Source: Phallusia mammillata
Taxonomy: Eukaryota
DNA length: 64,000 nucleotides
Direction of reading: 5' to 3'
Assembly (NCBI GenBank): GCA_965637545.1
Contig: OZ281499.1
Span: 7,936,001-8,000,000, forward strand
This document shows positions 44,801 to 63,085 of the stretch, in pieces. The translations under genes were made by a program, and so were the position numbers. The notes under the pieces are model-generated. The model saw nothing but the letters and a program-made list of their open reading frames with translations, did no database searches and was not told the DNA's origin. Numbering within the stretch: position 1 is the stretch's first letter; each line of letters begins with the position of its first letter.

Positions 44801-45739
44801 GTTTCATTACTCCCTTGCAAACGTCCTACAAGATTTGTCGTTCACTTGGAACTTTAAATCAAAGTAATAGGTCATATTTTCTCCGGTACGAAAACAACAA
44901 AAAATGCATTGTTATTCTTTCAATTTAGAACGATGGGTTTGTGACGAACAATACCCTTAAAGAGAAAGATTGTTTGCGAACATGTTATGCATGAGTGATT
45001 CCCTCCCTTTGGAAATTCCACAAGCAACTTTTGAGTGTTTTTGTACGGTGTACGCTTGCCTGTGCTATTTTAACTTGTACGGTCTAGAAAACTGCTGGAA
45101 AATTCTTCAATCTGACTTAGTGATGTTTAATAAATAGGCCAACGGGAAATTGAACGGACAACTGAAGTCTTCAAATGGAATAAAAGTTGTTAGGTAAGTT
45201 TACTAAACGATTTGCTTTTTCAGCGTGCTACTGTCGTGAATGACCCAGTTTTTCAATGGTGTTTGCTGTAAAAAAAAACTGACATGAACATGCAAGATTT
45301 TGCGGAAATATTTGGAGGTGTAGGAAAGTTGATCTATTCCTGCTTAAAGTCTATCTAGTGCTTTTGGTGTTGTTTAGGATCACATCATGCTTAAGCCTGT
45401 ATGTTTTTGGTAGTTATGGTCCTGTTTCTGTGCACCTTCATAACACTTATGATTAAAAACAAATCTGTTTTGTTAAAACAAAATGTATTTTTCATGATAG
45501 GTTGTCTCTTCTTTCAGTGTGATGCTTATCCTTGATTTCTGGTTACATGGACAAGTAAATGGAAGTTCTGTTACTCTGGAAAATAAAACATTCATTGTTT
45601 AAACCCAACAGCAAAAAGAGTACAGAATACGTGATGGATTTGTTGAAATTGTGCCTTTTTGGTTTTTGTATGAATAAAAAATGGGGCGACTTTTCTGCAC
45701 AAATGAAAAGACTGTTTACCAGCAGGTAAGTAAACCTAC

Positions 45740-48700
45740 CATTCGGACAAAGATATCTGACTTTGTAATTTTGACATTTTCTAGAACTTTGGTGAATTCC
45801 TCTGCACAGCAAACCATCTTTGGCACTAAATGCTTCAAATACGTCACCAGACTCTCTTGCAGGAATCTGAAAAGATAAACTTTGTGTAAAAACCTTTCTT
45901 GTGGTTTGTTGTTTGTTTTAAGCCCTGGAGGGCTATTTGTTGCCACATAGAAAAAACGTTAGTTTTTAGATTCCAAATAAATATTTAGAGTGAATCTATT
46001 CTAGACTGTGACTTAAAAAAAACTTGTATTGGCAAAGCCTTTGTATATTTTAGCTATAAACAAGTTTTATTTAGAAGGCAACCGACTATTTTCGGACGCT
46101 GACTTTAACAACTGAAACTATATGAGATGTGGAATAAATAGGCTAAATGCGGAAAATTTATAATATGAGTTGTTTGCTCTGACTTAGCATAAGAAAAGCA
46201 GTCGCGTGTAACATTTTATATCGTTTTCACAATCTTATTTAGAATTGAAATATAATTTATACTTGCCCCGTTAGTTGTCTGTGCTTGTATGGCAACTGGT
46301 TTCAAACATGATCCGCTGCCAGGCAACGTTTCATCATCGTCGTATGCCGGGCGTCGTGGTTTGTCTTGGTCCGTCCAATCAGTCCAGTAGACTATTAACA
46401 ATACAAAATGATTTAACTTCCATATAAACCAAAAACGTTGACTATTCCCGCATACAGTCTGTTTAGCTACCAAGTGTATTTGTTTCTGTGCGAACGTTTT
46501 ATCGTTGTTTTTGGTTTGTGAATGACAGAACAGGATATGTTACAACGTCATTATATAAATTGAGAAATAAATGGCGGTTTATTCTTGTGGTATAGGTTTT
46601 CTGCTCAATTTGTGCGTTCTATGTTTCTTCTGCAAAAGCTATTTATTTCCTTGTTTGGAGTACTAAGTAAGTATATTTCAGAACAGTCTTTTCTATCTTC
46701 GTAAACAGGTATAGCATCTAATTTTTTTTGTTCAGACAAACAATGTGCATGGCTACAAGGTACGATAGCCGTGTTAACAAGAAGACTCTGCCCTTGCTTT
46801 AAATTTAGTATTTACCCTGTAGTGCGTCTGTTGGTGGAAAATCAGTTCCAGAGATGGAACCAAGTGGACAGCTAAACCTTGCTTGGAAATGACTGTTCAC
46901 TTTCCGCGTTTCTGTTCCTGTAGGCATTTCGCAAACGTCATCAGGTCGGTAGGTCCTGGCGATGCGATGAAGTTCAGGCAGCGGGTCGAGAGGAAGGTCA
47001 TTGCGATTGTAGTGAGCGATTGGAATCCAAAGAGTCCATTCCGTTTCCTCTGCGTTTGTTCAACAAATGTTGTTGGAGTTTTGTGTAAAACACGTCGACG
47101 CATGACGTCACATATACCGTTATAACCGGTGGTGGGATTCATTTTTTTGTGAGCCTATTCTATCACAAAAGTCATATTTTTCAGCCGGTTCTAAAACTTA
47201 TTACAAAATCCATTGACAGTAACCAGTAATGCTAACCGGTTCGCTGATCTCATAAAATTTCGTGAGACTGTTTTGTCCGAACCGGCTGAATCACACCACT
47301 GGTTATAAGCTACTGTAAAAATGTAAGTGGCAAAGCTGTGAAGAGAAACGTATGCTCAAATTTTATTAGAAGCATACATTGTTTTCTTCCAAATAAGGGT
47401 ACACTGTAAGCAAGCATATCTTGTAAGCATGTTTAGATAAGAACGAAAATCATTTTCACGTGGTAGAAAACTATTATCGTACCGTCCAAATCGTCGTCGC
47501 TAGGTAGCGCTTCATCCTGCCACGGTGTATAAAGGTCAAGAGGCTCCAAGTCGCCACAGCTAACTCGCGGATTTGTGTCGTTATTTGAAAGTTTCATTAC
47601 TCGCCTTTGGATTGTTGACATGGTGGGAGAGATGCCGCACAAAATGTGTGCCAGGGTAACCTTCTTAATTGACCTCATTTGACCTGCGAGTTAGGTAGGC
47701 TAACATCTTTATCTAACGTTAAGTAATTTCTCCTGTATTTAATCTAATTACTTGAAATATACATTTGAACTAAACAAACAAAAGGACTTTATTGGTTATG
47801 ATTATTTGTGAAAGGTTCAGTTTAAAACTTTAAACGGTTTTAAATCGCCCAAAAGTAGATTTATTGTCTACTTGAAAAGACGTTTTTAAGCATTTAGTTG
47901 ATATGGGATGTTACATATTTACCTATTGTAAATTTTTAGGTCGGGGATTAAAGAATATCAATACACCACTTACGTTTTGTAAACCGATTTTCAATTCCCC
48001 CGTTTTCAAACCAATGAGAATCTCCACGTTTAAGATCGCGGAATTGATAAGCCAATAGACAAGCAAAAGTCGGTCCCACCGTTGCTCCCTGTAGCGGTGT
48101 TTCGGCGATTCCAGCAGGGAAAAGATCGATTTCTTCTGGGTCGCTGTTAACACAAACAGAACAACTGCTCAGAGCAGGGTTTCTACAGATTTTGACATCG
48201 GTAAAGTTACAAGTTGTGTTGTCCACAAACCGAATGCATTAAACAATGCATTGGGTAACTACCCAGACACACCCATGTTCATGAATCGCCCGGATGTGGA
48301 CAATACCGCCTGAGTTGAGATACTAAATACATTACTTAGGGCTGTTATCAAATAGGAATTTAAAATAAGTCCATTTTATTGTTTTTAAATCAAATAATCT
48401 AAATTTTAAATGATTATAGAGACACGAGGTCCGCTTTTTCTCCGGCAATTGTAATTTTATTTCGACGTTTTGATGTCCTATATAGGTCGTCTTCATCAGG
48501 GCAAATTACGCTGAATGTGCGTAGTACAGTGCATGATCAACAAAGAACAAAAGTTATGCGCAAACACGTCACAAGGCAACGACAACACCTTCTCTAATGA
48601 TTGGCGTCCTTGCGTTTAAGTCTTTTTTTCTTTGTTTATCGTGCTCTGCACAACGCGCATTCAGTGTTATTTAGCCTACCCTGATAAAGGTGACCTGAAT

Positions 48701-51700
48701 AGGACGTCGGAATACAAATACAATTGCCGGAAGAGCTCTATAAACTTAAAACAAGTTAATACATCGAGGTTTACTGGAAGAAAAACTTATTTGAAGTTCT
48801 GTAAACTTTAAAACTCACCTGTATATTGAGTTGAATTTACTTCGAACATCGCTTGGAATGTCCTGTAGATTTGATGAAAGGCCACAGAATCTACGGTGTG
48901 CCAAGTACGAAGGTATTCCGTGATCCCGACCTCTTTGTATATTTACCGCCATAAGATCTGAACCAAACTTTGCTGTGAAGTAAAAAGAAAGTATAAACTC
49001 CAGTAAAATTAAAAAAACATAATAATCATCGGTCTTTCTAGGTATGTATAAAAACTAATAAGAATGAACAAACGAAATTCTATGATTATTACACGCCACG
49101 TTTTAAAGACGTATTTTTTGTCTCTGACAATAACAGATGAATTCTATTTCATTTGTTCATTCTTATTAGTTTTTATACATCCCTAGAAAGACCGAAAATC
49201 AATTTAGTCGTTAAAGTCATAAAATTGTTGCCACAACGTCAATTTGAAAAAAATGCCATGTCGAAATTCAAATATAATAGGACCTGGATCTGTCGTAAAG
49301 AGTTGATCTGTCAACGCTTCGGCGAGCTGCAAATCATATTTTGAGGCCGGATCTTCGTTCATTCCTCGAATAATCTCACCAGTTGCATCGTTTTTAACGA
49401 TCGGTTCGGTACTGAAGAAGCTGAAAATGTGGTTTTGCATTAGGATTATTTCAACTGGCAAATTTGTTTGTCACGCGAAACGTTGTAAATTTCTTTTGTT
49501 TTATTCCCGTTCTGTGAAAACTTTTGCAATGATATCCTATATTGTGAGTAAAGTAATGCAATTAGTTTTCCATTTTGGGCAGGTATTTTTGTTTTTTGTG
49601 GTCACAATATGGGACACAATGGGAGCATCCAAAAACACCATACCTTACGGCAGCCTCACATTTGGCTAAACTCTTATTGTCAGGGCGAAGAGCACTAATA
49701 CCCACTTATAACAATATATCTCTACAAATGCCGACGGTGAAACCTAGTTTCTTGCGTAATATTTTGAAGAACTTACTTCCTAACCCCAACCCTCTTTTGG
49801 CGGTTAAATAAACAATTTAGCTCATTGCGCCAGCTATCAAAATTTATAGAAATGTGGGTGTATGTCGTGAGTTACGGTGTTAGTACCTCTAACAAAAGTA
49901 TGAGATAAAATAAGTTATGACTTGATCCTATACTCGATTACACCAAAAACCGTTTCGAAATCTCAAACTTAGAGATCACGTTTTATGTTTCCTTCCTTCT
50001 ATTGTCAACAAAACAGTGAACGACTGAAAAAGCATGAAGGTATTTGAGCTTACTTTCCTTCCAGGGGCATGTCTCCAACTGCGGCATAATGCGGGTTACG
50101 CAAGGATGGTGTTCCGTGCACCAAAGTGTGGCCAAACCGGAAAGCGGCAGTCGTAAAGCTATTGTCGATTGTTGCGTCGTATATGGGATTGTAACCGTAC
50201 CAGAAATCCTGCGATTTCAGAATGAAGGTCATTTCAAGCCGAGTAAACTGATTGTAATTTTGGAAAATACGGGCTTGATTTGGATTTTACCTGATATAAT
50301 TGATACCACCAAAATTTTACTTTTGACATAGCTCTGAGTTTACTTTCAAACAAATTCGAGTATGGACTGGTTGCGAGTTTGTACTTTTTAGGTTGAAAGG
50401 TAGCCATTTCGGGCTGATTATAGTTCTGTTTTAAAAGCATTGAGAAAAAATTGTTCATTTTAATGCAAAATGGGGACAGTTCTTACAATCGGAGGTAAAA
50501 AGCGCATAACTTCGTAAAAATGTTGATGCGTGTTGGAATCGGTATACTTTTAGTAAGTCTAACTGTCAGTTGTAGTACTAAAACAAAGATGGTAAAAATG
50601 TGGTGTAAAACTGATAGTCTGTCAAAGTTATTTTTTTACCTTCAGCGGTAAGTCTACTTACATGTTTTGTTAATTCTAGTCCATATCTCTTCATCACAGT
50701 GGGACCTAGAGCAGCTGGCAAAAACTCGTTATAGGTGATTTGCTGTATTATGGCACCGATGATTTTTCTTGTCGTCTACATCAAAACAAACAATCACTTT
50801 TAATCCGTAATCTAGGGCGGTAAAAGCATGTAAAAAGAGCAAAAAATCAACCTGATATATTTTGTCGCTGTCCCAGTGGGGATTTTGATCAGCCAGTTCT
50901 TTGGCCATAAGGTTGTGTTTTCTGATCCAAACTAAATGATTTATCGACAAAGGTGGCTGTTCGTTGATCCGTGGGTCACCTAAGAAAGTCATACTTTTGA
51001 GACTGGGATAGGGTTAGAAACTGAATTTAACGTTAGGAACAAAATTTATCAGTTGGTGTTATTGTTTATTTTGTTATAAAACCTCACCCCAAACCTAATA
51101 GCCCTATTATTTTTGCCTTCAAATATTCACAGATGCTCTTTGCGCCATCGAACGGTATATTTAGCAAACTTCGTCTGATGTAAAGACTTGCATGAAACAG
51201 TATGTACTTTGTACAGCTAAATCAATCCTTGGAATCGTTTATATCATGGTAATTTACAGCGTTTAAACAGAATATTGTTGTGCTAAGTAATTCATTTAAT
51301 TACCGGCTGCAAAACACGGTTGGTCAGCTGGTTTGTGGATTGCTGGACAATCCATTGGTACATCACTGGACACTTGTGTCTCTCGAGGAAGGCTGACCGA
51401 GATGGGCGTTGTTTCACTTCCTGTTAACATCTGACCTGAAAAGGAAATTACGTAAATTGTTAATTTGGTCGCGACCAACAACAACCGACCCATATTGTAA
51501 ACTACATTGTTTAATTAATTCCTGTTTACTTCTAGACCTAACACATCAGCACAGTTATTGGTACATCTACAATAGCAACTCACTATATCGACAGTTTGGC
51601 AAAAAACGTTTGTTTCAAAGCGTTTTAGTAAATTGCACTAGTTGTCACACAAAATGACTAAACCAAAATACATTTTTGTTGAAAATGTATATTGCATACG

Positions 51701-54700
51701 AAAATGTTTCTATCGGGTCGTCGGACCTATCAAGTCACATGAATGGTAGAAAGGCACACTATTAAGTTAATTGCAATAATTGTTACATTTTTTAAATCTA
51801 GCAAATATGACAAAAACAGTTCAGAAGTAAACACCAAGATTAAGTTGTCTGTACCTGGTTCGGTAGCCCTCAAAGCATCAGCATGGGAAGTCGTACTTCC
51901 GTATACATTGCTTGCATCAATATACGCCGACTCTAAGTTGTTTTGTTCCCTGGTCTTGTTTTGACCTTATAAATAGAATGCAAAGTTGTTCCAAACTTTT
52001 CAAAAGAGTTTCATACAAGTAAAACAATTAGTAAATTAACCAATTTGTTCAAACACGACAAAACAACCACGGAAACAAACAGCCAATGGGTGATTTTATT
52101 TTTTCATTGATCTAGATCTAGTGTCTTACAGTTTTTGTCAACTGTCCTTGCGCTCCTTTTCAACTCAATACATTCTATTCCACCCATGTTGTTCATGGGA
52201 TCCGTGGACGAGACCAAAATATTGAAACATTCTTCTGCCGTGGTTCCACAATCACTACAATCCAGATCTGCCACTAACAAAGCATGCACCAGCGGTAATT
52301 AAAAGTTGTTCAGATTTTTTAACAATAAATGTTTTTTAAGACATTGTTTCAAACTCATATTTTACTTCTGTTTGAAATAGAATAAAACAAAAGAACAATT
52401 TTATCATAAGGTGCAATTTCTATAGTCAACAAAGTTAAATTGTTCGGAAATAAGTCTAATTAACTCTTGTACCAAGACCGAAACAAAAAACAGCAATGTT
52501 TCATTCAAAATAAAAAATGCAATTTCACGCAACATGGTATCTAAAATAACCGCAGGGGTTGCAGATTTGTTTGAGATTCAAACGAAAATGTTGTACCTTC
52601 GCTTCCTTCAGTTCTAGCAATGTCGTGGGCCAAAAATTGTCCCCAAGCTGGCATGTAGTTAGACATTGTCGTAGATTTTGGTTCCTCTGATTCCCGCAAC
52701 ATAATACTAACATCTCGAGCTGAGGGCAATGAGCTATGTCCTCTTGGAATGTCTATGATAAATCAAATAAATAATGCTAATATTTTAACGACGATTTCAC
52801 AAGCAACTTCGATGCCCTTGAGCCTGTTTGCGATTACCCGAACGTTCAATAACTCGAAATAATTCTTCAATAATGATAGAATGCATTTAGGTTTGGTATA
52901 TATGAAAAAATCCTACTCAAAATCATTTTATGGCTTGTTTTAATGCTTAAACCATTTTTTATAATTCTGTCAATATGTCTTGAATCAAGATACTTAATCT
53001 TTTATTGCAGTGCGTATGATCTTCAAAAGCTAAAATCTTGAGATGCAAGATTATGACAATTTTAACTTAAACTCGCGCAAAGGACGTTATATTGCTTTTG
53101 AGCATTGCAGCAAAACTGTGCAATATTAAATCAAGTTTGTTTCGTTTAGGCTACTACATAGCGCCAAATAAACTCGATATAGAATATAGCCACAGTTGCT
53201 ACTTAAAACAATAAACAAAGTGTACCTTGTTGGTTATCATAAGCTGCTGGCAAAATTCTTTTAAACGCTCGATTCGCTTTTCCGCGCTGTGAATCTAATC
53301 CATTGTTGCAAGAGCCGTCGATAGTGGCGTATTCACTGTGCAAAATGTACACAAAGATTGTTGGACACATACAAATTTGCAATGCTTCAAACAAACTCTT
53401 TCAACTACTTACAGGTGGTCGCAGTTAGCTTCGTCATAACACTTCGCTGGCATAAAATCAGCTACATTAAAAAACAAAAAAAAAACAAGTTAGTTATAAA
53501 ACCGTAGCTTAAACAAACCGCCTCAAAGAGAAGTAGAAAAGATTTAAAATCAATTCTTTTTAAAATGCAGTTCCTTGTTTATTTAAAGATGTTACCTTTA
53601 GAGATTCTTTTTCGTTCGCACAAAAACATATGCTTTTCTGTACACTTTCTCAGGGCAAAAGTACGAGTGACAGGCCGAAAAGCTAAACAGTCTTTGCGTA
53701 GGGAGTTCGGCAGGTTAGAGACGTGGCGAGGAACAGACGGTTGATTTCCCTGCAGAAAAAATGGACAACTGTGTTGTTTTCAATTTGAATCGCGTTCTGT
53801 TTATAAAGCCGATCTAAAATTAAAAAATATGTTCTGTTTGGGCTTGTATTGCTGTTGTCGAATTGGCATCCGCGGTCCCTTAGTTAGGGGTCCGCCAAAC
53901 AATTTAGGACAGACCGCGAGGAGCTTGGAGTATTTCTACAATCTTATGTAATAACAAATCTTGGTAATGTTAAAGTAAAATTTGTGGTATATGTCCTGTG
54001 ACAAAGTATGGTTCTTAACTTCTTTTGTAAGTAACAAGGAGGCTATTTTTGCACAAGGTTTTATTGTTTAGTCTGCTGGTTTTTGACGTAATATCTTTGC
54101 CTTTGGATGATTTCCACGCGAGATAATCTTGAAAACGAAACTAAATTCAATCTTGTATGTAGTTGTGGAAATAGCCCAGTTGTTATGGCCAGGTTTAGTT
54201 TCACAAAAGTATATTTAAGCTTAGTTTCAAACATGCGACAGTAAGTACACAAGATGATCGCGAATTAACCGTTATTTGAATGACATTTTTTGTTTAAAAA
54301 AAACTACGGGCTAGTAGGCTCAGTTGGAATAATTTACTTACATCGTAGATCGTATACGTTAGACTCAGTTAAACGTGTTTAAGATATTAAGTAGATTTTA
54401 GTGAAACACAATTCATGTGGATGGACCATTTTTTGCTCACAATGCGTAGTCTTACCGCCGTATGAAACATAAACGTTCCTTCGGTTTGAATGTCATCCAA
54501 GCCAACCCATAGCTGTTCATTTTCCGCGTTTTTGCCGACCACCCTGTCTGCCACAAACCTGAAACGCATAAAACGAAATTGTATCACCGGAAATGTGTGA
54601 CATTCAATCTATTGATATCTTTTTTATACTGTCGTAAATTATGAATTTTAGAATGTAATTTATGCGAGGCCAGAGTTGACAACATACCTTTTTCAATTTT

Positions 54701-57286
54701 TTTTTTAAGTTGTCAAATTTTTCCAATGTGTTCAAGAATGTAATTGGACAATGACTAATCTATTTTACCTATTTAGTTGTCACTTAATGATGTTTTAAAA
54801 ATTTTGTTAATTAAATGACAAAAAATGCGTGATAATAAAGAATAGACCAAACTGACAGTCATACTTTTGAAAAAATGGTTTTATAGGACTTTGAAGAATT
54901 TAAAAATACGAAAAACATAATAATATAACTATGACCACCATAATATACTTTTGTTTTGAAGAATTTGGGCTGATAAAGATGTTGCATAAAAGCTATAAAC
55001 TGATTAATATTTTCATACATGGCTGGCATAACTTTAAGCTTTTAAAACAAACATGTTTGTGTTAATCAGGAAAGTAACGGCCCAAATACACTTTAAGTTT
55101 AACGCTTAAAATGTGCATTAACATGAGTAACTGATGTGGCCTTATATCACAGTGTACAATATTTTGGCCGTTATTTCCGTGTATAGAGTTTCTAACCATT
55201 TATTTTTATTTAGTTAAATGTAGAAAGCATAAAATTGTCGTTTTGTTTTTACAAAACTTACCTGGCTACTTTTGTATCAAGAATTAGTTCAGTCGCCAGG
55301 TGACCGTTCCAACTTTCACAAATCAACTTTGCAGCGGAGAATTTCATCTCCGACGACAACAGTGCATATGACTTGCCGTCTTTGGATCGGTGTGGAAAAT
55401 TTGGTGGAGTTCCTGTAAATGAATGAAATATAGCAATGACACACAAATTTTGTCATAACGGTGTTAGGTTTTACTATTGTTGTTAGCAGCTCTATAAATA
55501 GTTATTTAATTCGATTTGAATGCATTTCTTGCCAAAGTGGTTTCTAAAAGGACAAACCTGAAGTCAGAAATCAGTAGGCTACATTATATCAAAAATAAAT
55601 TCTGAAGACAAGTAGACATATAGATTCATGAAACAGTATTGTTTTCGTTTTACTGTACAAAAATGAAAAAAGGATCTTCGCAAGAATGTGTGCCTTACCA
55701 ATTTTAAGTTCACAAAGTCCAAAATGCTCATTTTCACATGATTCAGCCTTCAACAATCTTGCGCTATGTGCTTGTGGCCTGCTGCCCATTGTTACACAGT
55801 CTGTGTTTCCATGATTATTTGGTTCACCGGTGTGCCAAAAATTGCTCCAAGCCTGACCAATGCTCAACTAGAAACAAAGGAATAAGCTCACATAAAAATG
55901 GATCGATTTATAAAAATATATTACAAGAAATTGGGACAGGGGCGAAAGAACTAATTCGGAATGCCCACACTGTGGAGCAGATAAGGAGGATACAAACCAT
56001 CTTGTCCTAAAATGCCCCTCAACCAAATTACCAGGCGGATATCGGACAGTACATGAATGCAAATGCGAAAACATATCCAACCTTTTATGACTTACCCCAT
56101 CATTCCAAACATATTTGTCTTCTTGTTTACGGTCATCGAGTCCAATCCAAAGATCGCCATCCGAAAATTCTTCTTTAAGCTTTCTAGAACATAAAAAAAA
56201 TCTATAATTTCCAATCTTTTGTGGATTTGTGCACAAAATAACGGCCTACATTCAAAAGTTTTGACCCAAAACGCGTGTATTAAGGGTGAGAATTTTCGTC
56301 CAATACATCTTTCGACCAAATTTCAAATTGCAACATTTCAACTTGGACCTATGCTTTGTGGCAGGGGTCGCCAACCTTTTTTGGACCGCGGACCGTATTT
56401 AAAACGGAAATTTTATCGCGGACCGGCCTTCAAAAACTACAAAAAATTAGCAATGCAAAACGCTCAAATTTGTTTACCATTTCTGGGAGGCAGGGCAAAT
56501 TGTTTCAAAGCTTTTAACCTGAAAAGGTATATGGTACCGTAACGAACTTATCTCGGACCGGCGGTTGCCAACCAAAATAAGTCAGCACCACGATTCCTCA
56601 ATTTTGTGTATTGTATGTCACCAGTAGCATGCAAATAAAACAAAACTTACTTGAAAGCAACTTCGTCACGGACACCAAAATGTGCAAGGTCTCCATTCCA
56701 ACCCTGACACTCCTTTCTTGCTAGCTCGTAGTTGAGTTTTACTTGAGTCAGTGAATACTGGTATCCGTTGTTACAATCCACCCAACCCCGCTTCATGAGG
56801 GCTGAAGCACAAACAGCTTATTAATGACGGGCCATATTTGGTTCGGATTTAAGTAAGATTCTAATCTCACCAATGAAGTTTTTCAATAACTATACTATTT
56901 CAGAGGTAATCCAAGTCGAGGGTTTTTGAGACTTTTCCCGAGTTAACGTTGTATCATAATAATGGTCCCTTTCATGGAATTATAATCTGTGTTATGGTTC
57001 ATCTATGCTCTGTATCTCAAAAAAAGTACGCTCAGGGAATTATAGATAAAACCAGAATGAAATTAGTTTCAGTGTCATTTTTGCATTTGAATCAGACTCG
57101 ATTTTTAGATCACCACATATACACCACCTAAAGTACATCTCCACTAATATACGACACTAGTTGGCCACTCTTGCAATAAACACTCGGGCTGTTAAACAAA
57201 TGCAAGCCCCATGTTACCACAACAGACTTACCGTCGGATGTCGTCCACAGTGCCAGACTGGCCACAATTAAAAGTAATGGCTTCAT
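45740..57286 (-). CDS. Secreted C-type lectin (x2) - animal heme peroxidase - WxxW (x2) multidomain protein; terminal exon uncertain (~45.5 kb)
   Basis: 23 phase-consistent exons (3118 nt, ~1039 codons): 57232-57286 (signal peptide [18 protein letters not shown]), 56651-56801, 56096-56183, 55699-55867 (CTLD1), 55262-55412, 54456-54558, 53596-53749 (CTLD2), 53413-53461, 53226-53335, 52597-52752, 52130-52273, 51855-51965, 51304-51435, 50852-50979, 50662-50775, 50054-50208, 49284-49420, 48819-48972, 47974-48143, 47483-47683 (peroxidase), 46816-47049, 46267-46391, 45740-45866 (WxxW). Peroxidase motifs: [53 protein letters not shown]. Confidence 0.9.
47127..47301. mobile_element. 175-bp hAT MITE (CAGTGGTGGGAT family) in a peroxidase intron
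   Basis: Ends CGGTGGTGGGATTCA / TGAATCACACCACTG; near-TSD GTTATAAC / GTTATAAG; reverse-orientation sister of 58559-58733. Confidence 0.82.
48414..48743. mobile_element. 330-bp foldback element whose arms carry decayed Penelope-type hammerhead ribozyme cores
   Basis: Ends TTATAGAG / CTCTATAA; long imperfect inverted arms. Minus arm: CTGATGAAG-GACGACCTATATAGGACATC-like stem-AAAACGTC (48464-48499). Plus arm: CTGATAAAG GTGACCTGAATAGG ACGTC (48681-48708). Confidence 0.7.
50995..51110. repeat. Fragment homologous to the interior of the 29514-29812 element
   Basis: GACTGGGATAGGGTTAG...AAACCTCACCCCAAACCTAATAGC matches the reverse complement of ~29614-29728. Confidence 0.65.
56362..56575. mobile_element. 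Degenerate hAT (Charlie-type) MITE
   Basis: Left end CAGGGGTCGCCAACC with GGACCG repeats; right end decayed, so that coordinate is approximate; no TSD. Confidence 0.6.
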
Positions 57287-58558
57287 TACCACTGCTTTCA
57301 GAGTTATTTGTGAACCTTAATCACCGTTCCTGGAGAACAAACGAACCTAAATCTATACTTGCGTTTTACATGAGTTAAAACCAGCTGGTGTTCATGTACA
57401 TAAGATATCGGTCAAAAATATGCAAATTAAAAATGGTAATTCACATCCTATTAGCAAAATCAGCCAAATTAGACCGGGGCCTCTTAGTGTTTTGTGCCCC
57501 TATTTTACATTATGCTTTGTAAAAGAAGATTTTTTGCTCAGCAACATTTTTAATTGCAGCACTAGCGGTCTCAACGCCTATCGAAACTTACGAAACTTCC
57601 AAAGGTTACCTGACTATCTGAACCCTGATCCCTGGGTAAATCTCTAAGTAAACGTCTAGTAATGCTTACCTTACGTTTACTGTTAATAACTTATTTTGCA
57701 TTCCAAGCACCCAGAACTACTTTTTTTTAAAATATGTAGCTGAATACTTCTACGTGACTAAAGACCAATGGAAGTCTAAGTAAAGCATACGCAAACTTTT
57801 ATCTTGCTCATAAAGTGAACAACTAAGTTACGTTTCATAATAAGAAACAATATTTATTGTAATGCATCGTGTATCTAACCTTTCATTAACTCGTAAACAG
57901 CATACGTGGAAATACAATAAAAGGTTTACTGTTGGTTAATTTACTTTTAACAAATTCGAATCACAATTCATTACCTCAATAGCATGCATCAATTATTTTG
58001 ACAAACGGCTACCCATTCTCATCTCACTGTGCTGCTCAAATATCAAATGTCACTGAAAACAGACACCACAATTGCGGTCTAAGCAATATCAGCTGTATTA
58101 TAAAGCTTTGAGGCTACGTGATCTGGTGTCTATTGGCATCGCTGCCTCGTAACGCACACAAGCGGAAATTAAGATGAATGTACAACGCAGTGATTGTTTC
58201 GACACAATGGAGTCGTTCCAATTGCGAAATAAATAGGTGCTTCGTTTGTCTGTACGTGATGTCATTGGTGTACTTGTTTATGATACATACAATTTTGTTT
58301 TAGAGCTTAAGTACTATCATGAACTGTTATACGCACTTGCTTCATTGTTCCAAATTACAATGATGTTTTTCAGTTAGGTTTAGTTAGGTTATGTATACAG
58401 AATCTGCTGACGTGATGCAAGAACCCAACAAGCTTCAAAACAATGCAACGATTAAGAGAAAGCATTTGAAAGTATAGCGCGTAAAATTAAAAAAACTTTA
58501 AAACACAAAAAGTCTTTAAATGCAGCAATAGACTTTCGCCAATAGTTTCTGTTATAGG

Positions 58559-59958: not shown

Positions 59959-62848
59959 TCACAACACCAAGTCCTTCTGGCCGTTGAGTAATTTGTCCTG
60001 CACGTCAAGAGCCTTTTTGGTGCGCTCTTCGTATTGCGGAAATATGGGAAAATATTTGGCCAACCTGCGTATAATGTAAACTAAAGTTTCTAGTTTGTAA
60101 GTGGTATAGGTTTGTATAGGTGAGTTATGGTAGAAACCATAGCACCATGGTATAGGTGTTGAGTTGTGATATAAACCATAGCACCATGATAACACAGCTT
60201 GTGTCCTGCAAGAATATCTATCAACACATTGTTTGTGGGAAATAGGTTTGTTTAGTTTTTCCTGTCTTAAAGTTGTCGGGCCGAACATTGCAGTCTGGGT
60301 TCCGGTTGGGCTCGGTTTGGGTAAAGTTTTAAATGTGAGTGAAGCAGACTTTATTTAAAGGTTACTAACACCCAGTCACATTTTTGTCGTAGTTCCACGT
60401 TGGTAAATTTTGTGCATAATTTGGGTCTGTTGTAAAACGAAATTTCTTGTTCGTATCGGGTTTCAGGCTTTTATGCTTGGGTTCGTGCTCTGATTTCGGT
60501 CCGGCTTATAACTCTGCTTAATCGATTTTTTCGAGTCTCCACAACTGCAAATCTCTTTTGAATACGATTTACTCCGCAAAAGGTGTACGTCTAAGGTTAA
60601 GGGTTGATTTGTACCAGTGTGCACCGAAGTTTCGGTTGGCCGAAATATTTTAGTCGATTATGCCGTTTTGCCGACGATTCGGTCTTGGTCCTAAACTCAA
60701 TATCTGTAGTTTAAAACATCATAGATAAACTAATTAATGACTAGTAAACACATGTCAAGTTGTCTGCAAATTAATCGAGGTTTTGTTTTGCTTACGTTTT
60801 GTGAAAGTTGTTTTGGAGTGTCATAAATAATTTCATCTACAATGCAAAGTTTAGTCCGTCAGATTGGGGATTTTAGGATAAGGCGGGTTCGGTGCATCAC
60901 TAGTTCGCTTTGCTATATTTACCTGAATTCAGTGGAAAACGGCAAAGAGTAGCATTTTCGTTGTTTTTCTTCAATCGACGAATGATCTTCAAAACCGTCA
61001 CCGTAACTTTGTCGCCATTTGGTAAATCCGCGTTCGGCATCAGTTCCTAAAAAAATATGATATGACTAAAAATCTTTCCGGCGATTAGGCAGTGAATGAT
61101 TCACAAAAGAACAATGTACGTTCCTTTACCTGGAAGAGTGTTATCAAAAAACATGCCGATAACTCCACCAATCAGCATAGGTGACTGCAAAATAATTGTA
61201 AAAATGTTGTCTATTTCAATCACTCCTGTTTGGATCGCATTTGGGTGAACTTTTGTCCATTCCGGCACAGAGAGTCCAAGGAAAATTGAAATTCCGATGA
61301 TAAAGATGTTTCTAAAGTTGAAAGATAAAGTTTATCAGCAAAATGATTTTACCTATACCTTCATTGTCTGGTAAAAGTTGAAATTTGTTTCTTGCCGTTT
61401 AGAATTTTGAAATGTATCGCTGAGTATTTTATTCTGTACTGTCCAAACTATTGCACCGAGTGGTTTAGATTTTTCTAGAGGTATGGGTGCAATTTCTAGA
61501 GGTATGGGTGCAATTTTTACCTGATATTGGTTTAGATTTAACAGGAGTCCAATCTTACAACACTGTTTTTTAAACTCGTTTTTTTATCGACAAAAGGCAA
61601 TTTAGCTGCAATTTTGTAAGATGAAAATAAATGTGTTAAAAATATTACTTTGGTTACCGCTTTAATCACACCTTTACCTGCTAGAATTGAGATCCACATA
61701 TTGAAGGTTACAAAGTCCCACAGCTGCTATCATTCCAAATAAAACCATGAACAAACCGCCGATAACTGGCTCCGGAACGAGGACAAAAATACCTCCAAGT
61801 TTTCCCAAACAACCAATAAGTACGAGAAGAAAACCAGCAGCTTGAAGTACCTTGTAAAGTGCATATTTTGCTTTGAGGCTATGCATTTAATTGAAAGCAA
61901 GTTTAGAGATTAAATGTATTAAGCAAAACCAACTGCTTATTTAAGTTGTCTTTAATGTTTGTTTCTTCGCAATCTTGAACGTAGTTTTGCTAAGTTTTAT
62001 TAAAACTCTTAAAAATTTCACGAACATTTTTTCTACTTATGCACTTTGCACGATCAAGCACATGTCAAATCGGTTATTCATGCTGACAAATCTATTTTGT
62101 GTAACTTTAAATTAAAAATAGCGCTCTGGTGCGCCATCTTGTGGAAATGTCAAGCAAAGTTTTACATCGACTTACTCTGCGACTCCCAACTCGTGTAATA
62201 CCAATGGCAGCAATGTTTTCGCTGTACGAGGTCGTACCTGTAGTGGTTCCGAAAATACCAGAAATCACACAACCAATTCCCTCGAAACATATTCCCCTGT
62301 AGGGCAAAATACCACAAAAGCTGTTTAAAAAACAGTAAAAAGCCAAAAAATGGGGGTTGACTTGACCTGTTAATTGCGTAGTCCGGTGGAGGAGGACCGC
62401 CCGCTAGTTTTGCGCATGCGTAGTAGTCGCCTATCGATTCGATGGTTGAGCCAAGTACACCCGCACTCATCCCAACTACCCCGGCCAGTGTAACTTTAGG
62501 CCAGCCCCACTGGAACGGATAAGGCACACGAAACCTTTAAAAGCAGAACAAGAGTATTATATTAACCATTTTTTGCCATCTTGATGCAAAGATCTAACGA
62601 TTTGAGACAAAGTTTAAAAGGCCATCGCAAACCGGTTACATTGGTTGTAAAACGAAATTGTGCTTTTTAACGTCAAAACAAAAGTACCAAAACAATTTCA
62701 AAAAAATATACCACGGACTATTTTTGAGGACATTAATCCTGAAATCTGCCCTTGCAACGTGCTGTGGATTGCTGGGGTCTGGCGAAAGCACATCAGTCAC
62801 TGTAAGAATCCAACAAAAAATCCAACCTAATACCATGGCGATGATTAC
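59959..62848 (-). CDS. SLC23 (nucleobase-ascorbate transporter) family member, 3' portion; 5' exons beyond the window end
   Basis: Exons 62712-62848, 62367-62534, 62176-62296, 61678-61850, 61130-61311, 60923-61046, 59959-60064 (TGA), phases consistent. Motifs: [69 protein letters not shown]. Confidence 0.92.
60268..60516. mobile_element. Degenerate Ac-like hAT MITE in an SLC23 intron
   Basis: Ends TAAAGTTGTCGGGCC / CCGGCTTATAACTCTG; reverse-orientation relative of 20971-21085. Confidence 0.55.
61472..61513. repeat. Exact 21-bp tandem duplication (TTTCTAGAGGTATGGGTGCAA x2), intronic
   Basis: Read directly from the sequence. Confidence 0.9.
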
Positions 62849-62893
62849 CTTAAAAAATGTTTTGAAATCAAATACAGGACGATTGTGGTAGAG

Positions 62894-63085
62894 CTACTAA
62901 CACAAGAACTCACAGACAGGCCTTCTAATTTCCAAGAAGTGGCGTAACGGAGCATAAGCTTTTACCATGGCAATAATTGCTGACTCAGCAAATGGCTGAG
63001 CAATTATTGCCACATAAAAGCTTATGCTCCGTTGCGCCACCTTTTGGAAATCAGTAGGCCTTTTTGTGAGTTCTTGCGTTAGTAG
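62894..63085. mobile_element. 192-bp near-fully palindromic (foldback) MITE
   Basis: CTACTAACACAAGAACTCACA...TGTGAGTTCTTGCGTTAGTAG; the arms pair almost to the centre (GCTGACTCAGC...GCTGAGC). Confidence 0.85.

What the first reader, a model, noticed from the sequence alone, without database searches (positions are those of the whole stretch)
45740..57286. Secreted lectin-peroxidase-mucin fusion: signal peptide + 2 C-type lectin domains + heme peroxidase + 2 WxxW domains
All four module types splice into one open frame over 23 exons with every phase matching. Known peroxidase-cyclooxygenase superfamily architectures (MPO/LPO/EPO, TPO, peroxidasin, peroxinectin, DUOX) do not to my knowledge include N-terminal CTLDs. 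CTLD1 has an EPN (mannose-type) motif but lacks WND, and CTLD2 lacks both. WxxW domains occur in gel-forming mucins and CILP. Inference: a glycan-targeted oxidative enzyme anchored in mucus or extracellular matrix, for pattern-recognition-directed killing or matrix cross-linking. This is the best candidate for an undescribed system here.
Basis: partly seen in the sequence, partly recalled or inferred. Interest (0 to 1): 0.85.

Follow-up and report, generated by a model that had tools for sequence, protein, structure and literature searches.

The report
Sea-squirt lectin-peroxidase-mucin-domain fusion gene
This is a real, expressed sea-squirt (Phallusia mammillata) gene for a secreted haem peroxidase with two lectin-like domains in front and mucin-type WxxW modules behind; the same design is conserved in two other sea squirts and sits in public databases mislabelled "myeloperoxidase", but I found no study of it.

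Summary
On the minus strand, 57286 to 45740, 23 coding exons join in frame. They encode a signal peptide, two C-type lectin-like domains, a complete animal haem peroxidase domain, a truncated WxxW-like module and one canonical mucin-type WxxW (CysD) domain. A 24th exon with 5 coding bases (45575-45571) is inferred from the Ciona gene.

Single 3.2-3.3 kb RNA contigs from four runs (two studies) join exons 1-13 at exactly the predicted GT..AG sites and run on into exon 14.

The protein matches UniProt A0A6F9DLS3 ("Myeloperoxidase", Phallusia mammillata). Ciona intestinalis and Clavelina lepadiformis have orthologues with the same domains, the same intron phases and the same neighbouring gene.

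The lectin-bearing genes nest inside a tunicate-wide peroxidase+WxxW family. That family branches with invertebrate peroxinectin/chorion peroxidases, not with MPO/EPO or the amphioxus TPO-like proteins.

The catalytic residues are intact, but the Asp that forms one haem ester bond is Ala. It is Ala, Val or Ile in all eight family members aligned at that site.

The lectin sugar-binding motifs are not conserved between species, so "mannose-targeted" is unsupported.

Most likely it is a secreted peroxidase tethered in an extracellular matrix or mucus. It is catalogued but uncharacterised: a new variant of a known kind, of moderate interest.

The parts
57287..57330 (-). 5' untranslated part of exon 1 (extent inferred)
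   Evidence: In the run X1 contig, exon 2 starts at record position 100, so 99 nt lie upstream of the exon 1 donor. That is 55 coding nt plus about 44 nt of UTR. Run X4 has 154 nt upstream, reaching about 57385.
57232..57286 (-). Exon 1: ATG and signal peptide (residues 1-19)
   Evidence: P0001 threading. Joint 56801/57232 is seen in 4 runs. The hydrophobic core reads [11 protein letters not shown].
56651..56801 (-). Exon 2: CTLD1, N-terminal part
   Evidence: Pfam Lectin_C stretch 40-151 in P0001.
56096..56183 (-). Exon 3: CTLD1, middle part (WIGLDD)
55699..55867 (-). Exon 4: CTLD1, C-terminal part with EPN; no WND
   Evidence: Pfam Lectin_C on the exon alone, profile positions 69-106..
55262..55412 (-). 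Exon 5: CTLD2, N-terminal part
54456..54558 (-). Exon 6: CTLD2, middle part (WVGLDD)
   Evidence: Pfam Lectin_C, profile positions 36-84..
53596..53749 (-). Exon 7: CTLD2, C-terminal part (no EPN/QPD, no WND)
   Evidence: Joint 53461/53596 links it to exon 8.
53413..53461 (-). Exon 8: short Cys-containing linker between CTLD2 and the peroxidase
   Evidence: Found only through P0001 mapping. Both flanking joints are seen in the RNA contigs.
53226..53335 (-). Exon 9: start of the peroxidase domain (Pfam positions 1-34)
52597..52752 (-). Exon 10: distal site. Gln382, Ala385 (in place of the haem-ester Asp), His386, Asp387
52130..52273 (-). Exon 11: peroxidase
51855..51965 (-). Exon 12: peroxidase, Ca-binding loop (Ser456, Tyr458, Asp460, Ser462)
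51304..51435 (-). Exon 13: peroxidase
   Evidence: The loose end of each contig continues with the first letters of exon 14.
50852..50979 (-). Exon 14: catalytic Arg528 and haem-ester Glu531
   Evidence: Its first 30 nt are seen as the loose-end consensus.
50662..50775 (-). Exon 15: peroxidase
50054..50208 (-). Exon 16: proximal His632
49284..49420 (-). Exon 17: peroxidase (weak GTCCTA donor)
48819..48972 (-). Exon 18: Asn713 and the RGRDHG motif
47974..48143 (-). Exon 19: peroxidase, RGD at residues 793-795
   Evidence: (100% match to P0001 residues 755-810).
47483..47683 (-). Exon 20: end of the peroxidase domain and an acidic linker
46816..47049 (-). Exon 21: truncated WxxW-like module ('unit A', residues 881-949)
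   Evidence: No Pfam hit. Conserved in all 9 family members. hhalign 97% to the canonical WxxW N-terminal half.
46267..46391 (-). Exon 22: canonical WxxW/CysD domain, N-terminal half (GC donor)
   Evidence: Pfam Mucin2_WxxW profile positions 1-49..
45740..45866 (-). Exon 23: canonical WxxW/CysD domain, C-terminal half (127 nt, GTAGGT donor)
   Evidence: Pfam Mucin2_WxxW profile positions 45-88, 34 bits. Same 127-nt length and phase as Ciona exon 23. The genome reading matches the Clavelina and Ciona C-termini.
45498..45575 (-). Exon 24 (inferred): 5 coding bases (45575-45571, completing Glu, then TAA) plus a 3' UTR of about 73 nt
   Evidence: Ciona has a 5-nt final coding exon after a phase-1 intron. 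The acceptor is ttttccag|AGTAA. The model gives a 3123-nt CDS and 1040 aa. Contig lengths leave 1621-1631 nt 3' of exon 13, against 1545 nt for exons 14-23 plus about 78 nt.

Best explanation
One Phallusia mammillata gene of 24 exons makes a spliced mRNA of about 3.3 kb for a secreted protein of 1040 residues. Its layout is: signal peptide, two C-type lectin-like domains, a short Cys linker, a full animal haem peroxidase domain, a truncated WxxW-like module, and one mucin CysD-type WxxW domain.

Shown here:
- The exon structure.
- The physical joining of the lectin exons to the peroxidase exons in RNA.
- Conservation of the whole design in Ciona and Clavelina.
- Descent from a tunicate-wide peroxidase+WxxW family of the peroxinectin-like branch.

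Inferred:
- The enzyme binds haem and turns over H2O2. The distal His386, Arg528, proximal His632, Asn713, Gln382 and the Ca site are all present.
- It can hold its haem by only one ester bond (Glu531), because the second bond's Asp is Ala385.
- The non-catalytic modules tether it in a glycan-rich extracellular material. I favour the tunic or another secreted matrix, with mucus as the alternative. There it would oxidise halides or tyrosines locally, for cross-linking, halogenation or surface defence.
- The lectin domains probably act as matrix- or ligand-binding modules rather than canonical Ca-dependent mannose binders.
For: Gene model: P0001 threads onto the window with one residue difference over residues 1-1025 and 22 canonical introns.

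RNA:
- In each of 4 runs from 2 studies, a single contig of 3240-3314 nt carries 12 joints exactly at exon boundaries 1-13, all CT..AC on the + strand. Each contig then continues into exon 14.
- Eight runs hold 0.18-0.20 of the sampled words of 47400-57300. By my own count, fully spliced exons would give about 0.205.

Domains.

Catalytic residues: mapped on lactoperoxidase and across 47 homologues.

Orthologues: Ciona P0197 and Clavelina P0151 have the same three Pfam families, identical intron phases and a Xan_ur_permease neighbour.

Phylogeny:
- The lectin-bearing clade is supported at 99/98.
- It lies inside the tunicate family, supported at 100/100.
- That family lies on the peroxinectin/chorion-peroxidase side, supported at 98/95.
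- An AU test rejects a clade with MPO/EPO and the amphioxus TPO-like proteins, p = 1e-5.

Secretion: signal peptide and no hydrophobic stretch elsewhere.

WxxW: the family profile matches solved mucin CysD domains, E = 2.8e-8.

Context from the literature: peroxinectin-like peroxidases (Oik21a/b) are components of the Oikopleura house matrix (PMC3390340). From established knowledge, relatives such as MLT-7, chorion peroxidase and peroxidasin cross-link extracellular matrices.
Against: - No tissue or stage is known for the RNA runs. Their identities are coded, and six other runs of the species hold none of the words.
- No activity, haem or ligand data exist.
- The lectin sugar-site motifs differ between the three species, so what the lectin domains bind is unknown.
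- The Asp-to-Ala change could lower or alter activity.
- The link to Oikopleura house peroxidases could not be made. The Oik21a primers match none of the three Oikopleura peroxidase+WxxW loci I fetched.
- AlphaFold gave low confidence for the lectin part, so nothing can be said about how the domains pack.
Confidence: 0.55

Rival explanations
1. It is a peroxinectin-type humoral immune factor made by blood cells. The lectin domains would recognise microbes, the RGD/KGD motif would bind integrins for adhesion or opsonisation, and the peroxidase would kill what is bound.
For: The peroxidase domain branches with arthropod peroxinectin and related enzymes. RGD lies at residues 793-795, and KGD at the same place in Ciona and Clavelina. 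The closest solved relatives of the lectin domains are immune receptors: DEC-205, DC-SIGN and the mannose receptor. A Ciona peroxinectin induced by LPS is cited in the literature (Vizzini 2013, listed in PMC5465252).
Against: The R/KGD sits in the conserved ...GDR(F/Y)W... segment that most peroxidases share, with Asp or another residue at the first position, so it may be structural. The sugar-binding motifs are not conserved. WxxW/CysD modules point to matrix or mucus rather than to free opsonins. The cell type that expresses the gene is unknown.
Confidence: 0.22
2. It is an iodinating or halogenating peroxidase of the pharyngeal or endostyle mucus. It would be held in the mucus net by CysD-type modules, so it would be thyroid-like in function without being a TPO orthologue.
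For: The WxxW module is the mucin CysD domain. Gln382, the distal-cavity residue corresponding to MPO Gln91, is conserved. Ascidians iodinate proteins in the endostyle (review PMC13078365). The enzyme that makes halogenated DOPA in tunicate holdfasts is unknown (PMC13079984).
Against: It is not in the MPO/EPO/TPO-like clade. Ascidians have a separate TPO-type gene (PMC8699336). There are no expression data.
Confidence: 0.12
3. It is a catalytically dead pseudo-peroxidase, and only its adhesive modules are used.
For: The haem-ester Asp is lost (Ala385) in every family member aligned at that site.
Against: The distal and proximal His, Arg, Asn, Gln, the Glu ester residue and the Ca site are all kept. 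They are conserved across a deep tunicate family. In Culex chorion peroxidase, the Asp position in the same alignment is also Ala.
Confidence: 0.07
4. The fusion is a gene-prediction artefact that joins neighbouring lectin, peroxidase and WxxW genes.
For: The public record P0001 contains one non-canonical 59-nt CT..AC skip (45782-45724) and a frameshifted tail. This shows that the deposited model is imperfect.
Against: RNA contigs from 4 runs physically join the signal peptide, both lectin domains and the peroxidase exons. The contig length fits the WxxW exons. Three species share the design, the intron phases and the neighbouring gene. The introns at the domain borders are only 77-433 nt.
Confidence: 0.02

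Closest known systems
Ciona intestinalis XP_002120559 / XP_078492478 'myeloperoxidase' and Clavelina lepadiformis 'myeloperoxidase-like' (P0197, P0151)
   Same: Orthologues. They have the same signal peptide, 2 CTLDs, peroxidase, unit A and WxxW layout. Identity to P0001 is 44% over 95% of its length for Clavelina and 50% over residues 700-1025 for both. They share the intron phases, the Xan_ur_permease neighbour and Ala at the haem-ester Asp position.
   Different: The sugar-site motifs differ: QPD/LDD in Ciona, APD/LDD in Clavelina, EPN/KAE here. They have KGD where this protein has RGD. The neighbouring gene is in the opposite orientation. None is functionally described in the papers I could search.
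Tunicate peroxidase+WxxW paralogues (Phallusia A0A6F9DQD3 'mlt-7-like', Clavelina P0074, Oikopleura E4WT44/E4YTE0, environmental P0199/P0204/P0213)
   Same: The peroxidase clade is the same (100/100). Unit A follows the peroxidase and is followed by a canonical WxxW. The haem-ester Asp is replaced by Ala, Val or Ile.
   Different: They have no lectin domains. Five of the six carry a second canonical WxxW domain, and some a Cys-rich tail. The lectin-bearing clade has only one canonical WxxW and ends right after it.
Peroxinectin / chorion peroxidase / MLT-7-type invertebrate peroxidases (subfamily 3 of the peroxidase-cyclooxygenase superfamily)
   Same: These are the nearest non-tunicate branch (98/95). 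They are secreted haem peroxidases used for matrix cross-linking or for adhesion and immunity (established knowledge). The K/RGD lies at the same position.
   Different: In the members sampled here I saw no lectin or WxxW modules (precomputed Pfam lists). Most keep the haem-ester Asp.
Mammalian lactoperoxidase / myeloperoxidase (solved structures, e.g. 2e9e, 1cxp)
   Same: These are the best solved relatives (275 and 267 bits, covering the full domain). The catalytic His/Arg/His/Asn, the Glu ester and the Ca site all align.
   Different: They lie on a different branch (AU p = 1e-5). This protein has Ala for LPO Asp108 and Gln for the MPO sulfonium Met. It has no propeptide-type processing motifs that I could test. 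The database name 'myeloperoxidase' is therefore a misnomer.
Peroxidasin (LRR + Ig + peroxidase + vWC)
   Same: The principle is the same: a haem peroxidase flanked by extracellular binding modules that place it in a matrix.
   Different: The flanking modules and the branch are different.
Amphioxus 'eosinophil/thyroid peroxidase-like' P0159 (somatomedin B + peroxidase + Sushi + EGF + C-type lectin)
   Same: It is a chordate peroxidase that also carries a C-type lectin domain.
   Different: The lectin domain is single and C-terminal, on a TPO-like backbone in the other main branch. It is an independent fusion.
Mucin CysD domains (MUC2, MUC5AC, MUC5B; Pfam Mucin2_WxxW)
   Same: The family profile of the tail domain matches solved CysD domains, E = 2.8e-8 to 1e-5. 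The WxxW start and the ...C.DY.VR.LC end are shared.
   Different: It has fewer cysteines (4 by my count), stands as a single domain at the C-terminus of an enzyme, and is preceded by a shortened derivative.

Membership tests
Animal haem peroxidase (Pfam PF03098, peroxidase-cyclooxygenase superfamily) | Full-length match to the family profile | tested here: met
   524 bits, residues 309-840 on profile positions 1-530. The exon pieces are colinear with the profile.
Animal haem peroxidase (Pfam PF03098, peroxidase-cyclooxygenase superfamily) | Distal His, catalytic Arg, proximal His with its Asn partner, and the distal Ca site | tested here: met
   His386, Arg528, His632, Asn713, and Asp387/Ser456/Tyr458/Asp460/Ser462 align with the lactoperoxidase residues.
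Animal haem peroxidase (Pfam PF03098, peroxidase-cyclooxygenase superfamily) | Two haem ester bonds (Asp before the distal His, and Glu after the catalytic Arg) | tested here: not met
   Glu531 is present. The Asp is Ala385, and it is Ala, Val or Ile in all eight tunicate family members aligned at that site. Only a single ester link is possible.
Animal haem peroxidase (Pfam PF03098, peroxidase-cyclooxygenase superfamily) | Haem binding and peroxidase activity | not testable with these tools
   This needs recombinant protein.
Chordate peroxidases MPO/EPO/LPO/TPO (subfamily 1) | Branches inside that clade | tested here: not met
   It lies on the other side of a 100/97 and 98/95 split. An AU test rejects a joint clade, p = 1e-5 (the group was named after seeing the tree).
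Chordate peroxidases MPO/EPO/LPO/TPO (subfamily 1) | MPO sulfonium Met after the ester Glu, or the TPO-type Sushi-EGF-transmembrane tail | tested here: not met
   Gln532 follows Glu531. There is no Sushi or EGF hit and no hydrophobic tail.
Peroxinectin-like peroxidases (subfamily 3) | Branches with invertebrate peroxinectin/chorion peroxidases | tested here: met
   A 29-row clade supported at 98/95 includes Ixodes peroxinectin and insect chorion peroxidases.
Peroxinectin-like peroxidases (subfamily 3) | Integrin-binding KGD/RGD motif that mediates cell adhesion | tested here: inconclusive
   RGD at residues 793-795, and KGD in the orthologues. But the motif lies in a segment conserved in most peroxidases, and adhesion is untested.
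Peroxidasin (subfamily 2) | LRR and Ig domains before, and vWC after, the peroxidase | tested here: not met
   None was found by Pfam.
C-type lectin-like domain (Pfam PF00059) | Profile match, WIGL-type core and the four conserved cysteines, twice | tested here: met
   Lectin_C 74.7 bits in 2 stretches. WIGLDD and WVGLDD are present. The cysteines are C50/C122/C142/C150 and C186/C260/C275/C283, read from P0001. PDB relatives.
C-type lectin-like domain (Pfam PF00059) | Ca-dependent sugar site (EPN or QPD plus WND) | tested here: not met
   CTLD1 has EPN, but KAE stands at the WND position. CTLD2 has neither. The orthologues read APD/LDD and QPD/LDD.
Mucin2_WxxW / mucin CysD domain (Pfam PF13330) | Profile match above the curated cut-off | tested here: met
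   This holds for the second module: 39.1 bits in P0001 despite its faulty tail, 34.3 bits on exon 23 alone, and 53.2 bits in Ciona. The profile hits solved CysD domains.
Mucin2_WxxW / mucin CysD domain (Pfam PF13330) | The first module (residues 881-949) is also a WxxW domain | tested here: inconclusive
   Pfam gives no hit for it. hhalign gives 97% probability, E = 1.2e-10, over 44 columns of the N-terminal half only. I read it as a truncated derivative.

The most novel reading that the evidence does not exclude
The tunicate peroxidase+WxxW family, of which this lectin-bearing ascidian branch is one form, is a dedicated class of matrix-resident haloperoxidases or cross-linkers for the tunicate-specific cellulose coats (tunic and house) and adhesives. 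The family-wide loss of one haem ester bond would tune halide or tyrosine chemistry. The lectin and CysD-type modules would dock the enzyme on the glycan scaffold. Such an enzyme could be the missing one behind halogenated tyrosine and DOPA in tunicate matrices.
Probability: 0.15. Interest if true: 0.7.

Novelty: new variant of a known kind. Interest (0 to 1): 0.42.

Why it matters
Multidomain haem peroxidases such as peroxidasin, TPO, peroxinectin and MLT-7 place oxidative chemistry at defined extracellular sites. This gene shows a further solution that is restricted to tunicates: a peroxinectin-like peroxidase welded to mucin CysD-type modules, and in ascidians also to two lectin-like domains, with a lineage-wide change at a haem-linking residue.

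It corrects a misleading database name. The protein is not a myeloperoxidase orthologue.

It also gives a concrete candidate for unexplained peroxidase-dependent chemistry in tunicate tunic, mucus or adhesives. The candidate can be tested in Ciona, where knock-outs and in situ hybridisation are routine.

Tried and rejected
- My own splice-site scoring missed the 49-nt exon 8 and misplaced several weak junctions. It was replaced by threading P0001 (two scripts timed out).
- Link to Oikopleura house peroxidases Oik21a/b: the published Oik21a primers match none of three Oikopleura peroxidase+WxxW loci, even with 4-5 mismatches allowed. They also match nothing in the metagenome contigs. The link stays open.
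- The ESM Atlas look-up gave nothing usable.
- AlphaFold on the full length, with a 40-row alignment, gave pLDDT around 90 for the peroxidase domain but under 50 for the lectin domains. No conclusion on domain packing is possible, and I did not run fold searches on the model.
- An Rfam gathering scan of 45000-58000 found no RNA family.
- Ten literature searches found no description of the architecture, and the accession numbers appear in no paper.
- The 3' end could not be settled from contig lengths alone. The spliced model (end near 45498) and an unspliced read-through (end near 45662) would both end in A-rich DNA. I prefer the spliced model because Ciona has the same 127-nt + 5-nt arrangement, and because the read-through has no stop before the contig would end.

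Full report
**What is in the sequence.**
The window has no N and about 37% G+C. Between 57286 and 45740 the minus strand carries a chain of stop-free segments. Taken one at a time, they match Pfam Lectin_C, then An_peroxidase in strict profile order (positions 1 to 530 over twelve segments), then Mucin2_WxxW.

A search of 1.8 billion representative proteins with one 56-residue peroxidase exon returned a 1068-residue protein that is 100% identical over that exon (P0001). It is UniProt A0A6F9DLS3 / CAB3263936.1, named 'Myeloperoxidase', from the ascidian Phallusia mammillata.

**Gene model.**
P0001 threads onto the window with a single residue difference (Ser in the window, Gly in the record, at residue 930). 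This gives 22 canonical introns, 21 GT-AG and one GC-AG, with consistent phases. It includes a 49-nt linker exon (53461-53413) that my own splice scoring had missed.

After residue 1025 the public record uses a 59-nt skip (45782-45724) with CT..AC ends and then runs into a frameshifted tail. Read straight on, the genome gives ...[14 protein letters not shown], which matches the C-termini of the Clavelina and Ciona orthologues...YRVRYLCLKG and ...YRVRYLCNKG. The deposited tail is therefore most likely an annotation error.

In Ciona, exon 23 is 127 nt long. It is followed by a phase-1 intron and a last coding exon of 5 nt. In Phallusia, exon 23 is also 127 nt (45866-45740) and ends at a GTAGGT donor. 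The acceptor ttttccag|AGTAA at 45575 completes a Glu codon and gives a stop. My model is therefore 24 exons, a 3123-nt CDS and 1040 residues.

**Transcript evidence.**
Eight runs of the species, from two studies, hold 0.18-0.20 of the sampled 31-letter words of 47400-57300. By my count, the exons alone would give about 0.205. These runs therefore hold the spliced RNA and not the genomic DNA.

I laid four of the runs on 51301-57300. Each has one contig of 3240-3314 nt with twelve joints. Every joint sits at a predicted boundary of exons 1-13, and all have CT..AC ends on the + strand, that is GT..AG on the gene's strand. Each contig also has a loose end whose consensus is the start of exon 14. 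So the signal peptide, both lectin domains, the linker and the peroxidase are on one RNA molecule.

The contigs have 1621-1631 nt left 3' of exon 13. Exons 14-23 add up to 1545 nt, so the WxxW exons fit, with about 78 nt to spare. This is arithmetic, not a direct observation, because only one 6-kb stretch could be laid.

The contigs differ from the window at 56707. The change is synonymous (Cys50).

**Relatives and architecture.**
Word-indexed searches found two proteins with the same three Pfam families: Clavelina lepadiformis 'myeloperoxidase-like' (1071 aa, 44% identity over 95% of the query) and Ciona intestinalis 'myeloperoxidase' (XP_002120559 / XP_078492478, 1065 aa). Their genes have 23 and 24 coding exons, with the same phases and mostly the same exon lengths as the Phallusia gene. 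A Xan_ur_permease (SLC23-like) gene lies upstream in all three species. In the window it lies at about 62.9-60.9 kb on the minus strand, so its orientation differs from the other two species.

The same search uncovered a wider family of peroxidase+WxxW proteins without lectin domains: a Phallusia paralogue ('mlt-7-like'), a Clavelina paralogue, several Oikopleura dioica proteins, and marine environmental sequences.

Amphioxus has a peroxidase with a lectin domain too. There it is a single C-terminal domain on a somatomedin B + peroxidase + Sushi + EGF backbone.

**Phylogeny of the peroxidase domain.**
I built a maximum-likelihood tree of 45 peroxidase domains, rooted on two bacterial ones (the quick version is).
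- The three lectin-bearing proteins form a clade (99/98).
- That clade lies inside a nine-member tunicate peroxidase+WxxW clade (100/100).
- The tunicate clade lies on the side of arthropod, nematode and mollusc peroxinectin/chorion-peroxidase-like enzymes (98/95).
- It is separate from vertebrate MPO/EPO, the peroxidasins and the amphioxus TPO-like proteins (100/97).

An AU test rejects the best tree that unites the tunicate family with MPO/EPO and the amphioxus proteins (p = 1e-5). I named that group after seeing the tree, which weakens the test somewhat. The database name is therefore misleading: this is a peroxinectin-like enzyme, not a myeloperoxidase.

**Catalytic site.**
I aligned the domain with lactoperoxidase (275 bits) and with 46 homologues.
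- Present: Gln382, distal His386, Ca-ligand Asp387, the Ca loop (Ser456, Tyr458, Asp460, Ser462), catalytic Arg528, ester-forming Glu531, proximal His632 and Asn713.
- Changed: the Asp that forms the second haem ester bond (LPO Asp108) is Ala385. It is Ala, Val or Ile in all eight tunicate family members aligned at that site, while nearly all other sequences keep Asp.
- Gln532 stands where MPO has its sulfonium Met.

I infer an active enzyme with a singly linked haem. The possible effect on halide chemistry is speculation.

**Lectin domains.**
Both have the WIGL-type core and the four canonical cysteines (read from P0001). Both match Lectin_C. Their nearest solved relatives are domains of DEC-205, DC-SIGN and the mannose receptor.

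The Ca/sugar site is not canonical. CTLD1 has EPN, but KAE stands in place of WND, and CTLD2 has neither motif. At the same places Clavelina reads APD/LDD and Ciona QPD/LDD.

**The tail.**
I aligned the tails of all nine family members.
- Directly after the peroxidase comes a conserved module of 60-69 residues ('unit A': WTxW ... C ... RFxCP). Pfam does not recognise it.
- Profile-profile comparison links it to the N-terminal half of the canonical WxxW domain (97% probability, E = 1.2e-10).
- A canonical WxxW domain follows. Its family profile matches solved CysD domains of MUC5AC, MUC2 and MUC5B (E = 2.8e-8 and weaker).
- Five of the six paralogues carry a second canonical WxxW; the lectin-bearing proteins end after the first.

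On this tree, the simplest history is as follows. The fusion of peroxidase and WxxW happened at or before the tunicate ancestor. Later, in one ascidian lineage, the lectin pair was gained and the last WxxW was lost. The root and the order of these events are not tested.

**How it most likely works.**
Shown: a secreted, multidomain, conserved and expressed protein with an intact catalytic set.

Inferred: the binding modules hold a haem peroxidase in a glycan-rich extracellular material, where it uses H2O2 for local oxidation. I favour a secreted matrix such as the tunic, for three reasons.
- The family is tunicate-specific.
- From established knowledge, its nearest relatives include matrix cross-linkers (chorion peroxidase, MLT-7, peroxidasin).
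- The Oikopleura house proteome contains two peroxinectin-like peroxidases and a CysD-like oikosin (PMC3390340).

I could not show that those house peroxidases belong to this family. Immune (peroxinectin-like) and mucus or iodination roles remain live rivals. No tissue information was available for the RNA runs.

**Known or new.**
The sequence, its orthologues and their Pfam domains are already in public databases. Ten full-text searches found no paper that describes or names such an architecture, and none cites the accession numbers. Subscription journals are largely outside that library.

I class it as a new variant of a known kind: a multidomain extracellular haem peroxidase. Interest is moderate.

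Noticed in passing
window 45724-45782 (minus strand): The public protein record (A0A6F9DLS3 / CAB3263936.1) skips these 59 nt, which have CT..AC ends (GT..AG on the opposite strand), and then reads a frameshifted 43-residue tail. Read straight on, the genome gives the conserved end of the WxxW domain. This is probably an annotation error in the deposited model.
   Followed up: partly
window about 60900-62900, minus strand: A Xan_ur_permease (SLC23-like nucleobase/ascorbate transporter) gene lies just upstream. The same family is the upstream neighbour in Ciona and Clavelina, but on the opposite strand relative to the peroxidase gene. This suggests a local inversion.
   Followed up: partly
P0001 residue 385 and the same column in P0074, P0151, P0197, P0199, P0207, P0213, P0305: Every tunicate peroxidase+WxxW protein aligned at this column has Ala, Val or Ile where other animal peroxidases have the Asp that forms a haem ester bond. 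It looks like a marker of the whole family.
   Followed up: partly
window 46266-46265 (intron 22 donor): This is the one GC-AG intron among 23. Several peroxidase-exon donors are weak (GTACAC, GTACAA, GTCCTA, GTTGAT), yet those within exons 1-13 are used precisely in the RNA contigs.
   Followed up: partly
window 56707 and residue 930 (exon 21): There is a synonymous A>G difference (Cys50) in the RNA contigs of all four runs, and a Ser/Gly difference to the public protein. These are ordinary polymorphisms of this variable species.
   Followed up: yes
An Rfam scan of 45000-58000 at gathering threshold found no family. That does not exclude decayed copies.
   Followed up: partly
L005:8744-11725 (Oikopleura dioica FN653016.1): Two adjacent gene calls (a 212-aa An_peroxidase and a 473-aa An_peroxidase+WxxW) look like one peroxidase+WxxW gene split by the annotation. 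It lies about 20 kb from a second family member (L001).
   Followed up: no
L004:23462-24770 (Clavelina lepadiformis OX392447.1): A separate small Lectin_C gene lies about 5 kb downstream of the Clavelina orthologue. It could be related to the source of the fused lectin domains.
   Followed up: no
P0159 / P0173 (amphioxus and an environmental sequence): These are peroxidases with somatomedin B in front and Sushi, EGF and a C-type lectin domain behind. This is an independent lectin-peroxidase fusion on the TPO-like branch.
   Followed up: partly
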